Made by a program: the position numbers and the translations under genes. Below are positions 25,842 to 28,800 of a DNA stretch of 64,000 nucleotides, one piece after another; position 1 is the first letter of the stretch; every line of letters begins with the position of its first letter. The notes under the pieces were generated by a model. That model worked only from the letters and a program-made list of their open reading frames with translations, had not been told where the DNA came from and searched no databases. The stretch comes from Stylophora pistillata (taxonomy: Eukaryota), in NCBI RefSeq assembly GCF_002571385.2, contig NW_019218225.1, positions 52,384 through 116,383 on the forward strand, read 5' to 3'.

Positions 25842-28800
25842 TTATAGCAACAACACTTCCCCTTTCCTGATAACTTTTCCATCGCAGTCTAACAAAGTAG
25901 GCCACAAATAGCACTTGATTTTGCGTGACCCTGAGTACAGTGCTCGACGAGAAGGGCTCCTTTCTTCGGAGGGACTAAACGCTTGACTCACTTCGTGGAC
26001 TTTTGGGTCATAGTCAGTGGTCTTGTAGTCAATTCTCAGAGGAGGAACCTGTGTAATAGTACACCATGCAAACTGCGTGCAATATTTAATATAGCCATTC
26101 AGTCTATACAAGAGATCCAAGTCGAATTCAAGGAGAAAAGATCCCCTTTGCAACTGATGACGAGTCCATTTTTCAGAAATAGATCTTTTCACGTCCTGCA
26201 AATGAACGGAACGAACAAACATGATTATATTTTTGTGGGGAGCTTAAAGAGGTTTAAGAAGGGACTTACCGACAAGTTAATGACTACGAGAAAATCACTA
26301 GTTAATCACTACAAGAAAAAAATTAATGACCTAACTAAAATTAAACTAAAACGTTTATGGATGACAAAGCAAAATCAATCCAGAATTTCCACTTTTTAAA
26401 TATTCACTTTCGACGGTATTTGTTAAGACAGTAAACAATCATTAGTCTGTTTTCAACTTGTTTCTTAATTTGTTGTGAATTTGATATGATTTTATCAGTC
26501 ATAACAAATAACTGGAAAATTGCAAAGAAAAGGTAGAAGGGTATTCAGATACTGTTGAGCTTAAAGAACCAATTAAGAACAAATAAAGAGCATTGAATCT
26601 ACCTGAACAAGTGAATTCAAATCGTGTGTCTTCGCTCTTTCTTTGACGAGAATCATCAACTCATTGATCACATCCTGAGTGGCATGCACATCGCCTTTTG
26701 GATTGTTATACAGCGTGTTCCAAAGCTAGCCAATGAAATATGAATATCTGTCACCGATGTAAGTGTAAGTTTCCCTCCACCAATACAATTACTAGCGGAG
26801 GGCAAAAAAACTGCCCTTCAGTGGTTTGAAAACGCTTCCTGCTCGATATTGGCCAAGTTGCGATAGACGAAATATCCATCTTCTTTATTTCGTACGCAAG
26901 TGGAGTGCTTTCCACTCAAAGGGAATACAAACTCTAACCTCCTTCAGAACTAAGCACTACTTTATTCAAATAACCAGGATTTTCACGGTTATCATACTCC
27001 TCGGATGTTGGGAAGGGACACACGAAGGGTGTGTCAAGAATAGACCACATTGCCTCCACCATCTCTACTCCGAAGTTGTCGCAAACTTGTATGGAAGCCT
27101 CAAAATCCACTAAGTAAACAGACTTGGTTGTCCTATCGATCTAGGTTAAAAAAGCCCACTTCGATAAAAAAAAAAGCAACTTGAAATTCCTTTATAAGTC
27201 CATCACTACAAAAATTAATGACTAACAAACCGTACTTTGCTTTGGAACGATGTCGTATCTGACCCCAACGCAGGAGCCTCAGCGGCCAATGTTTCCATTA
27301 CACTGGATGTGAATTTGACGAAGGACTCTTTCACCCTGAGAACAACTTCAAAGGCTACCTAGATCCGGAGAGGAAGACATATTTATTAGAAACTTTCTGA
27401 ATACTGTTTCACGTTTTACTAAGTTTGGTGAGCAATGTTAAAGACAAAATTGGCATTTAGCAAGAATTTTCATTAAATGTGTTGTTAAACTTATTTAAAT
27501 GTAAAGAACATAAGTGGAAATAATATATTACTACAAGCTATTCAGCACAAAAATTATAATAAACAAAGTTGCGGTTGTGAATTTGACATGAAAGCAGATG
27601 TTCAGTTTATCGGTTATCTCCTGGTTAGCTATGTCAAATCCACGATCAAGAAAATACTTCTAACTATTTTAATAAAAGACTTTGATAGTAAATTTTATTT
27701 TAGCACGTTCAGCATCTCTTTCTTTAAGGTGACCTTAAGTGTAAACAACTTGTACTTTTCATCTTCCGTACTGAATTTATAATCAATTGACTCGTGTTAA
27801 CAACACGTAGTTTTTTCTGGGGGTGGTACTTGTGTAAGCCCCTTCTTCCTTGAATCCGCTGTTTATTCAGTTGTTATGTAACAAACTTCAAGGGCTACTC
27901 TCGTTTTAGTTATCTTTTTAAGTGCTATTCTGATCTACGCAATGGCTTCTTCATAATTTTAATATTGCCAATCTTGTTTTCGTTTTACCATAACTAAACT
28001 GGAAATGTAAGAAATTTAAGGTAGAAAATGATTTTGTAATTGCGTAAATGACTCGAAGGTACATACCTAGTATGCATGAGCTATTTCACGCAACTTAACG
28101 TGATTCGCTAGTTAAGATAGAAACGATGACGATGCATGAAAATTGGCAGCTTAGTAAGTGTCACCTTTATAACTTGGTGAACAAAAATTTTCACTCAGAG
28201 TTGAGCTAGTCCCGATAGTAGTAAATTGTATTAAGGTTACCGTGCACCTTCAGGGGTGTCTCGCGTGCAAGCGATGTAGCGCGTCCGGTTTAAACTGTAG
28301 ATATCTAAACTCTTATATCAAATTAAAGCTTATAGGATTGGCTATCAGACTATACAAAAAATTGTGAAAAAAATGAATTGTCGAAATTTTCACGACTTCT
28401 AAATGCGAGCGCCCAAATTACCTTTTGAACGTTACGTGTCAAAGCGAATTTTGTTTTTCGCTTATTTAATGTGTTCCTCCGTTTCCGGGGCCAAAGCGAT
28501 AATTAGCGATAACGTATTAAATTTCAGTGAAAAGTTACGGAACATTTTTCAAATAGGATTAAAAAAATGTGGAGTGATCGTACAAAAATCGCTCTTGAAA
28601 AAAAAGTATTTAGAAATAAAAAATTCGGAGACACTCTTTTGTTGTTTAAATGTAAAACTAGCTACTGTCAAAATTTGAGAGCAATCGAACAAATTCCGTT
28701 TGACTTGTTGCCCTTAAAAGGTGATTCGGGCGCTCGCATTTAGAAGTAGTGAAAACTTCGACAATTAATTTTTTTTAAACTTTTTGGTATGGTCAGTTCT

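What the first reader, a model, noticed from the sequence alone, without database searches (positions are those of the whole stretch)
25842..26195. MIEAP-like C-terminus resembles the GrpE beta-head: possible dedicated nucleotide-exchange factor for HSPA12
Seen in sequence: the last exon encodes ...DYDPKVHEVSQ...KIKCYLWPTLLDCDGKVIRKGEVLLL*. Established: the GrpE head has the pattern FDPxxHEA...VxxVxxxGYxLxGRVLRPAxVxV at the extreme C-terminus, after a long N-terminal coiled coil and a helical bundle, and GrpE dimers bind the Hsp70 ATPase domain. This protein has the same order of coiled coil, helical region and beta-head, and it shares a promoter with an Hsp70-family ATPase. Inference from by-eye motif comparison only: MIEAP-type domains may be GrpE-derived regulators of HSPA12, forming a eukaryotic dnaK-grpE-like module.
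Basis: inference. Interest (0 to 1): 0.82.

Follow-up and report, generated by a model that had tools for sequence, protein, structure and literature searches.

The report
MIEAP tail folds like GrpE
The last exon of a coral coiled-coil gene encodes the end of a MIEAP domain whose predicted fold matches the bacterial/mitochondrial Hsp70 nucleotide-exchange factor GrpE better than anything else in the PDB. The gene sits head-to-head with an orphan HSPA12-type Hsp70 in corals, a sea anemone and amphioxus, which points to an unrecognised co-chaperone pair that has not been shown biochemically.

Summary
Window 25842-26195 (minus strand) is the spliced, transcribed last exon of Stylophora pistillata LOC111340218 (469 aa). 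It encodes the C-terminal part of a MIEAP domain (PF16026).

The start codon of this gene lies 442 bp from the divergent start codon of an HSPA12A-like Hsp70 ATPase.

Sequence searches do not place the exon in GrpE:
- Pfam and PDB sequence searches give no GrpE hit.
- hhalign gives probability 3-7% and P about 0.005-0.013.

Structure does link it to GrpE:
- A template-free AlphaFold2 model of the exon (pLDDT 85) has GrpE as the top 10 Foldseek hits.
- In an independent all-against-48,161-chain search, the top 4 hits are GrpE.
- The sequence and structural alignments agree in register: YDPKVHEV matches FDPxxHEA, and GKVIRKGEV matches GRTLRPALV.

The MIEAP-HSPA12 adjacency recurs in at least 10 co-diverged pairs in this genome (Mantel r 0.92). 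It also occurs in Oculina, Porites, Nematostella and two Branchiostoma species. It was not seen in Ptychodera, Aplysia or the salmon louse.

No paper found links MIEAP to GrpE or HSPA12. Binding and exchange activity are untested. The scan's earlier notes on this cassette are all on this same window.

The parts
25842..26195 (-). Last coding exon (exon 9, stop codon 25842-25844) of the MIEAP-like gene LOC111340218 (product P0399). It encodes residues 353-469, which form the GrpE-like C-terminal module.
   Evidence: ORF and sequence. Pfam MIEAP at E 1e-9. RNA splice joint 26194>26602. Mapping of P0399.
25845..26051 (-). Beta head (exon residues 49-117), with predicted strands at 54-56, 67-69, 92-98, 100-102, 108-110 and 112-116. 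This is the part that superposes on the GrpE beta-wing.
26052..26195 (-). Two helices (exon residues 2-17 and 26-48) that precede the beta head. [quoted passage not shown]
25989..26012 (-). YDPKVHEV loop (exon residues 62-69), aligned with the GrpE FDPxxHEA motif. In human GrpEL1 the D171, P172, Y173 and A177 positions of this motif contact mortalin.
   Evidence: hhalign alignments. GrpEL1 contacts are taken from PMC11685456. The equivalence is by alignment only.
25845..25883 (-). DGKVIRKGEVLLL terminal hairpin (exon residues 105-117), aligned with GrpE HGRTLRPALVGVV. K107 falls on E. coli GrpE R183.
   Evidence: hhalign Viterbi alignment. Coral GrpE to 1DKG numbering. The structural range 117<->193 is consistent with the same register.
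26603..32293 (-). Upstream coding exons 1-8 of the same gene. Approximate positions: 32093-32293 (ATG at 32293), 31461-31568, 31201-31281, 30639-30758, 30199-30288, 29274-29509, 27237-27355 and 26603-26725. They encode the N-terminal coiled coil and the helical part of the MIEAP domain.
   Evidence: tblastn of P0399. RNA joints 26725>27236 and 27355>29273. Architecture from the P0121 model. Exon ends not covered by RNA joints are approximate.
32294..32735 (.). A 442-bp divergent intergenic region between the two start codons, presumed to be a bidirectional promoter.
   Evidence: ATG positions at 32293 (minus) and 32736 (plus). Transcription start sites were not mapped.
32736..38193 (+). Cognate HSPA12A-like Hsp70 ATPase gene (product P0271, 594 aa). 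Coding exons: 32736-32754, about 35023-35342, about 36098-36385, 36525-36704 and 37138-38193.
   Evidence: P0271 is 100% identical to the window and named HSPA12A-like in Stylophora pistillata. Pfam HSP70 at E 1.2e-8 over residues 54-445. Mapping. Its sequence retains the AIDFGTT, DIGGGT and LVGGF ATPase motifs.

Best explanation
The exon encodes the C-terminal module of a GrpE-like cofactor. The 469-aa protein has three parts: an N-terminal coiled coil that probably dimerises it, a helical bundle, and a small beta head.

The last helices and the beta head adopt the fold of the short-helical and beta-wing domains of GrpE. The gene is transcribed divergently from a 442-bp region shared with an HSPA12-type Hsp70 ATPase.

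My inference is as follows. The two products are made together. The beta head and adjacent helices dock on the nucleotide-binding domain of the neighbouring HSPA12. There they regulate its nucleotide cycle, most likely by opening the cleft and speeding ADP release, as GrpE does for DnaK and mortalin.

Shown here:
- the gene model and its transcription;
- membership of the MIEAP family;
- the fold resemblance to GrpE;
- the compact divergent arrangement;
- co-duplication and long-term retention of the pair.

Inferred only: dimerisation, binding to HSPA12, and exchange activity.
For: Fold:
- The exon model (no templates, alignment of MIEAP homologues only, pLDDT 85) has GrpE from Thermus, human, E. 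coli and Mycobacterium as Foldseek ranks 1-10 of 350,542 chains.
- The full-length paralogue model (pLDDT 83, beta head 96-98) again has GrpEL1 as the first Foldseek hit.

Sequence register:
- The hhalign Viterbi path aligns exon residues 54-114 with the GrpE beta domain, in the same register as the structural ranges.
- Its score was reached by 1 of 200 shuffled profiles.

Linkage:
- The two ATGs are 442 bp apart.
- At least 10 MIEAP-HSPA12 pairs lie on six contigs of this genome, including the canonical long-form MIEAP.
- Pairwise identities of the partners are correlated: Mantel r 0.92, permutation p 5e-5.
- The head-to-head arrangement is also found in Oculina, Porites (by annotation), Nematostella and Branchiostoma floridae. 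In B. lanceolatum the two genes are adjacent in tandem.

Context:
- HSPA12 keeps its ATPase motifs.
- A 2026 review calls HSPA12 function unknown.
- A 2025 review places GrpE-like factors only in bacteria, mitochondria and chloroplasts.
Against: - No sequence method places the exon in the GrpE family. Pfam GrpE gives no match at E up to 10 for 16 paralogues. The GrpE model finds only the canonical mitochondrial gene in this genome. PDB sequence and profile searches give nothing.
- A profile search of 1.84 billion proteins gave only 815 hits, far too few to include GrpE.
- hhalign probability is 3-7%.
- The beta head is small, and the helical bundle is much larger than in GrpE (five helices against two).
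- The residues that are invariant in MIEAP (W44, PP51-52, WP98-99) are not the GrpE signature. The D and P of the YDP loop are conserved in only some paralogues.
- Linkage can be explained by co-regulation and co-duplication without any contact between the proteins.
- The adjacency was absent within 10 kb for the MIEAP genes examined in Ptychodera, Aplysia and Lepeophtheirus.
- Vertebrate Mieap is described as a condensate-forming, lipid-binding protein with no chaperone link.
Confidence: 0.45

Rival explanations
1. The GrpE-like shape is real, but the protein works as vertebrate Mieap/SPATA18 is described to work. It would be a coiled-coil scaffold that forms condensates and uses its structured C-terminal region to bind lipids or other partners. 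On this reading the HSPA12 neighbour is only co-regulated, or acts in the same stress or immune pathway, and does not touch the beta head.
For: The exon is a bona fide MIEAP domain. The Mieap paper assigns lipid binding to the C-terminal structured region and never mentions Hsp70. Several MIEAP genes in other phyla have no HSPA12 neighbour. Divergent promoters often pair genes for co-expression only.
Against: It leaves two things unexplained. The best and only beta-domain match in the PDB is an Hsp70 cofactor. The pair with an Hsp70-family ATPase has also been kept from cnidarians to cephalochordates and through at least 10 co-diverging duplications.
Confidence: 0.25
2. The protein does bind its HSPA12 neighbour through the GrpE-like module, but not as an exchange factor. 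It could act as an inhibitor or lock, a targeting adaptor or a client-delivery subunit. This would make a two-component stress or immune cassette in which HSPA12 is the ATP-driven part.
For: The fold and linkage evidence is the same as for the main reading. HSPA12 lacks the alpha-helical lid, so part of the GrpE mechanism (face-S contact with the lid) cannot apply. The helical bundle is much larger than in GrpE. Many paralogous, fast-diverging pairs resemble families under diversifying pressure.
Against: There is no positive evidence for any of these alternative activities. The aligned positions include the loop and the basic residue that GrpE uses on the nucleotide-binding domain.
Confidence: 0.15
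3. The resemblance is coincidental or a modelling artefact. On this reading a small six-stranded head after helices is a convergent arrangement, and the adjacency is an inherited accident of tandem duplication.
Against: Every GrpE entry ranks at the top in two independent aligners and for two independently built models, with a clear gap to unrelated chains. The sequence and structure registers agree. The beta head has pLDDT 95-98. Adjacency in Nematostella and Branchiostoma cannot come from duplications within coral genomes.
Confidence: 0.1

Closest known systems
GrpE / GrpEL1 nucleotide-exchange factors (Pfam PF01025; PDB 1DKG, 3A6M, 4ANI, 8GB3, 9BLS)
   Same: The domain order matches: a long helix or coiled coil, then short helices, then a C-terminal beta head at the very end of the protein. 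The predicted fold of the last roughly 115 residues, and of roughly 300 residues in the full model, matches GrpE best in the PDB. The motif register matches: Y/F-D-P-x-x-H-E, and G-K/R-x-I/L-R-x-x-x-V. The gene sits next to an Hsp70-family ATPase, like bacterial grpE-dnaK.
   Different: There is no significant sequence or profile match. The helical region is about twice as large, with five helices. The invariant residues differ (W, PP, WP). The protein is made from a nuclear gene and has no obvious relation to organelles, whereas GrpE-like factors are described only in bacteria, mitochondria and chloroplasts. The coral has a separate canonical GrpE. The partner is the lid-less HSPA12 rather than a DnaK-type Hsp70.
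Mieap / SPATA18 and the MIEAP domain family (Pfam PF16026)
   Same: The exon is a member. All 16 coral paralogues match PF16026. A profile of the exon finds 815 MIEAP-type proteins across Metazoa. The protein shares the coiled-coil N-terminus and the structured C-terminus.
   Different: It belongs to a short, coral-expanded subfamily (about 350-520 aa) that lacks the long N-terminal region of the canonical long form. Vertebrate Mieap is described in terms of condensates and cardiolipin metabolism. In the papers searched, no fold assignment and no Hsp70 link had been made.
Eukaryotic cytosolic Hsp70 exchange factors (BAG domain, HspBP1/Sil1, Hsp110/Grp170)
   Same: The proposed job is the same: opening the Hsp70 nucleotide-binding domain to release ADP (mechanisms summarised).
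   Different: The folds are unrelated (three-helix bundle, armadillo repeats, Hsp70-like). None appeared among the structural matches. None is known to serve HSPA12.
Bacterial grpE-dnaK(-dnaJ) operon
   Same: A GrpE-fold gene is kept next to and co-expressed with an Hsp70-family ATPase gene, and the pair is inherited as a unit.
   Different: These are eukaryotic, intron-containing genes in divergent (occasionally tandem) orientation, not an operon. No J-domain gene was seen in the cassette. The unit is multiplied into at least 10 diverged pairs per genome.

Membership tests
MIEAP domain family (PF16026) | Match to the Pfam MIEAP profile above the gathering score | tested here: met
   The exon scores 39.1 bits against a cut-off of 27, E 1e-9, profile positions 123-194. 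All 16 paralogous exons match. P0121 matches.
MIEAP domain family (PF16026) | Coiled-coil N-terminal half followed by a structured C-terminal half | tested here: met
   The AF2 model of P0121 has long helices at 27-202, then a helical bundle and a beta head. This fits the description of Mieap in PMC10845071.
GrpE family (PF01025) | Significant sequence or profile match to GrpE | tested here: not met
   No GrpE hit at E up to 10 for 16 paralogues. The GrpE profile finds only the canonical gene in this genome. PDB sequence and profile searches are empty. hhalign probability is 3-7%, P 0.005-0.013.
GrpE family (PF01025) | C-terminal beta-wing fold | tested here: met
GrpE family (PF01025) | Stalk helix, short alpha-helical domain and beta-wing in that order (architecture as given in PMC12987570) | tested here: inconclusive
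GrpE family (PF01025) | Homodimer through the stalk, binding one Hsp70 | not testable with these tools
   A long predicted coiled coil is present, but the oligomeric state was not tested.
GrpE family (PF01025) | Binds the Hsp70 nucleotide-binding domain and accelerates ADP release | not testable with these tools
   This needs biochemistry. The only in-silico attempt gave no verdict (see Tried and rejected).
HSPA12 subfamily of Hsp70 (the neighbouring gene) | Hsp70/actin-fold ATPase domain with intact phosphate-binding motifs, plus a source name of HSPA12A-like | tested here: met
   P0271 is 100% identical to the window and named 'heat shock 70 kDa protein 12A-like'. Pfam HSP70 at E 1.2e-8 over residues 54-445. 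AIDFGTT, DIGGGT and LVGGF motifs are visible in the sequence.

The most novel reading that the evidence does not exclude
The MIEAP domain as a whole, including the p53-inducible tumour suppressor Mieap/SPATA18, is a very divergent, non-organellar homologue of GrpE. Its ancestral partner is the orphan HSPA12 class of Hsp70 ATPases. The head-to-head cassettes in cnidarians and amphioxus would then be surviving 'grpE-dnaK-like' units. On this reading HSPA12 has a dedicated exchange factor, and Mieap biology should be reread as Hsp70 co-chaperone biology.
Probability: 0.3. Interest if true: 0.9.

Novelty: new variant of a known kind. Interest (0 to 1): 0.8.

Why it matters
HSPA12 proteins are conserved and massively expanded in bivalves and corals. 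They are still described as functionally unknown, with no cofactors. GrpE-type exchange factors are thought to be confined to bacteria and organelles.

A GrpE-fold protein genetically coupled to HSPA12 from cnidarians to cephalochordates would do three things:
- give HSPA12 its first candidate cofactor;
- give the MIEAP domain its first fold and mechanism hypothesis;
- turn two open questions (what HSPA12 does, and what the structured C-terminus of Mieap/SPATA18 does) into simple binding and nucleotide-release experiments.

It would also explain why these genes duplicate as pairs in stress-exposed sessile animals.

Tried and rejected
(1) Complex prediction of the full HSPA12 neighbour (P0271) with the exon product as partner gave no verdict. 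The median score was 0.32 against a mark of 0.34.

(2) Sequence routes to GrpE all fell below significance:
- phmmer and a 16-sequence profile against PDB sequences;
- Pfam at E up to 10;
- BLASTP against the coral's own GrpE, E 0.3;
- hhalign, probability 3-7%.

(3) The ESM Atlas feature search, with MIEAP excluded, returned plant GIL1/IRKI C-terminal domains at 0.79-0.81. That is below the level at which such hits mean anything, and GrpE was not returned.

(4) I looked for domain fusions of MIEAP with Hsp70 among the long hits (P0245, P0156, P0199, P0241, P0198, P0170). None was found, only MIEAP repeats.

(5) Some synteny look-ups gave nothing usable. P0200 (Montipora), P0193 (Ptychodera long form) and P0211 (Limulus) are not on record. 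The scorpion gene is too long to fetch.

(6) Look-ups showing no HSPA12 within 10 kb: Ptychodera P0250, Aplysia P0268 and Lepeophtheirus P0232. In the Porites locus, the HSP70 neighbour is supported by annotation only. tblastn found no coding exon inside the 9 kb fetched.

(7) Literature searches for any MIEAP-GrpE or MIEAP-HSPA12 link found only co-mentions in gene lists. A search for the role of E. coli GrpE R183 found nothing usable, so that point rests on my memory of Harrison 1997 and Gelinas 2003.

For whole-protein work I used the database proteins P0399, P0121 and P0271 as returned, and searched the window exon by reference.
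Full report
**What is at the coordinates.** The window is Stylophora pistillata contig C441:52384-116383. On the minus strand, 25842-26195 is an open frame ending in the quoted peptide and a stop codon.

It is the ninth and last coding exon of LOC111340218. The 469-aa RefSeq product (P0399) maps onto exons running from 32293 down to 25845. RNA contigs and raw RNA-seq reads support three minus-strand introns with GT..AG ends. One of these is the intron that ends at the exon's acceptor, seen as the joint 26194>26602. 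Expression is low in the four runs laid.

The exon matches Pfam MIEAP (PF16026) at E 1e-9, covering the last third of that profile.

**The neighbour.** The plus-strand gene starting at 32736 encodes P0271. This is a 594-aa 'heat shock 70 kDa protein 12A-like' protein, 100% identical to the window. It has a Pfam HSP70 match over residues 54-445 and visible AIDFGTT, DIGGGT and LVGGF ATPase motifs.

Its first coding exon is a 19-nt micro-exon (ATG at 32736, followed by a GT donor). The MIEAP gene's ATG is at 32293, so the two start codons are 442 bp apart in divergent orientation.

**Does the sequence resemble GrpE?** The coral has its own canonical mitochondrial GrpE (contig C43), whose C-terminus shows the recalled pattern.

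Sequence methods do not join the two families:
- There is no GrpE hit for any of 16 paralogous exons at E up to 10.
- Nothing was found in PDB sequences with the exon or with a profile.
- A profile search of 1.84 billion representatives gave 815 hits, all of the 150 listed being terminal MIEAP-type matches. That is far too few to include the ubiquitous GrpE.

Profile-profile comparison of 111 MIEAP C-termini with 21 GrpE sequences gives probability 3-7% and P 0.013 or 0.005. I-x-Y-x(4)-F-x(4)-H pairs with the FDPxxHEA loop. In the Viterbi path the alignment continues through CYLWP/VGYKL to GKVIRKGEV/GRTLRPALV. Only 1 of 200 column-shuffled GrpE profiles reached the real score.

Taken alone, this is marginal.

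**Does the fold resemble GrpE?** Here the answer is yes.

AlphaFold2 was run without templates, using an alignment made only of MIEAP homologues. It gives the exon product two helices followed by six short strands, with mean pLDDT 85.

- Foldseek against 350,542 PDB chains returns GrpE from Thermus, human mitochondria, E. coli and Mycobacterium as ranks 1-10. The E-values are weak (0.3-2).
- In the second-look list, seven GrpE entries score 4.6-5.7 and the next chain scores 2.2.

A full-length model of the 85%-identical paralogue P0121 (pLDDT 83, beta head 96-98) shows a coiled coil at 27-202, a five-helix bundle at 216-397 and the beta head at 404-466.

- Its best Foldseek hit is again GrpEL1.

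**Registers agree.** I aligned the coral GrpE to the 1DKG sequence and combined this with the hhalign path. This puts exon K107 on E. coli R183. The structural range, model 49-117 against chain 135-193, implies the same offset.

The YDPKVHEV loop falls on human GrpEL1 F170-A177. In that protein, P172 and A177 touch lobe IB of mortalin, and D171 and Y173 touch its lid.

That R183 is a DnaK-contact hot spot is my recollection of Harrison 1997 and Gelinas 2003. I did not verify it here.

The D and P of the loop are conserved in only some paralogues. The family's invariant residues (W44, P51-P52, W98-P99, L101) are not GrpE signatures.

**Linkage with HSPA12.** The genome holds at least 19 MIEAP last-exon matches and at least 30 HSPA12 matches. 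At least nine pairs lie head-to-head within 6-26 kb on contigs C441, C408, C117, C1951, C499, C274 and C488. One further pair, on C408, is in tandem.

The canonical long-form MIEAP gene on C274 is also paired. It is the best Pfam match and has the long N-terminal region shared with Nematostella and arthropod proteins. Its start lies about 2.8 kb from the first coding exon of an HSPA12 gene.

Across ten pairs, the matrix of identities among MIEAP exons mirrors that among their HSPA12 neighbours (Mantel r 0.92, permutation p 5e-5). Identities go down to 20-30% for MIEAP and 30-35% for HSPA12. This shows that the pairs duplicated as units and stayed together over deep divergence. It does not by itself show contact between the proteins.

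Outside this genome:
- Oculina patagonica has the orthologous pair 485 bp apart by annotation.
- Porites lobata has a pair by annotation.
- Nematostella vectensis has its long-form MIEAP head-to-head with an HSPA12-like gene about 2 kb away.
- Branchiostoma floridae has a short-form MIEAP head-to-head with an HSPA12-like gene about 1.2 kb away.
- B. lanceolatum has a MIEAP gene followed 3.6 kb downstream by an HSPA12-like gene.

The MIEAP genes examined in Ptychodera, Aplysia and the salmon louse have no such neighbour within 10 kb. The linkage is therefore ancient and recurrent but not universal.

**What it most likely is.** The protein is a MIEAP-family member whose C-terminal half has GrpE-like architecture. 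It is co-expressed with, and probably acts on, its neighbouring HSPA12 ATPase.

The exchange-factor mechanism is inferred from the fold, the conserved loop and basic residue, and the gene pairing. Nothing here demonstrates binding or activity. HSPA12 lacks the helical lid, so at most the part of the GrpE mechanism that acts on the nucleotide-binding domain could apply.

I put the probabilities as follows:
- about 0.45 on a GrpE-like regulator of the HSPA12 nucleotide cycle;
- about 0.15 on binding with a different role;
- about 0.25 on a Mieap-type scaffold with mere co-regulation;
- about 0.1 on coincidence or artefact.

**Membership.** The protein is a member of the MIEAP family. It cannot be filed as a member of the GrpE family, because the sequence criterion was tested and not met. 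It has the GrpE fold and order of parts by prediction. Whether it descends from GrpE remains open.

**Novelty.** None of the papers searched connects MIEAP/SPATA18 with GrpE or with HSPA12. A 2024 study of Mieap describes the C-terminal half only as a hydrophobic structured region. A 2025 review restricts GrpE-like factors to bacteria, mitochondria and chloroplasts. A 2026 review calls HSPA12 function unknown.

The earlier notes of this scan on the cassette and its promoter are all on this same window. I confirmed the cassette and the 442-bp interval myself.

**Limits.**
- All structures are predictions.
- Exon ends not covered by RNA joints are approximate.
- The synteny sample outside corals is small: three positives in two phyla and three negatives.
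- The library of papers is partial.
Database proteins were used instead.

Noticed in passing
window 29640-30033: This repeat lies inside an intron of the MIEAP-like gene. It has enormous RNA depth on both strands (summed contig depth about 60,000-100,000; 160-560 raw reads per strand) and many variant letters and loose ends. It looks like a highly abundant, transcribed interspersed repeat, possibly tRNA-derived.
   Followed up: no
window 3118-8649 and 13174-20049 (plus strand): Two further HSPA12-like genes lie in the window, 43-69% identical to P0271 exon by exon. I could not identify that gene as MIEAP-like by tblastn.
   Followed up: partly
window 23583-23750 (minus): An older annotation of the same locus (P0404, 538 aa, no MIEAP hit) ends in a different terminal exon here, matched at 100% identity. 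This is either an alternative 3' end or a mis-joined model. The RNA joints I saw support the RefSeq last exon.
   Followed up: no
G000:C274:338326-342295 (minus) and 345135-358623 (plus): The canonical long-form MIEAP gene of this coral (about 49% identical to Nematostella LOC5508369 in the N-terminal region) is itself head-to-head with a divergent HSPA12-like gene. That HSPA12 gene has an intron of about 11 kb before its last exon.
   Followed up: yes
G000:C441:13444-14394; C666:100502-101496; C408:92311-92652: Decayed copies are present. These are HSPA12 matches with 14 and 5-7 in-frame stops, and a MIEAP last-exon match with one TAG. The cassette family therefore also leaves pseudogenes.
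   Followed up: no
proteins P0156 (1017 aa), P0199 (1108 aa), P0245 (3267 aa): Some database proteins carry 3-7 tandem copies of the MIEAP C-terminal module. P0245 has seven matched stretches but no Pfam hit at E 0.001. Their origin and meaning are unknown.
   Followed up: partly
P0399 residues 353-469 (window 25845-26195): With MIEAP clusters excluded, the nearest named clusters by language-model features were plant GIL1/IRKI C-terminal domains (PF24994), with scores of 0.79-0.81. This is too weak to interpret, but could be checked for a shared fold.
   Followed up: no
window 39800-41700 (minus): Coiled-coil-like open frames downstream of the HSPA12 gene suggest another minus-strand coiled-coil gene. 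I did not examine it.
   Followed up: no
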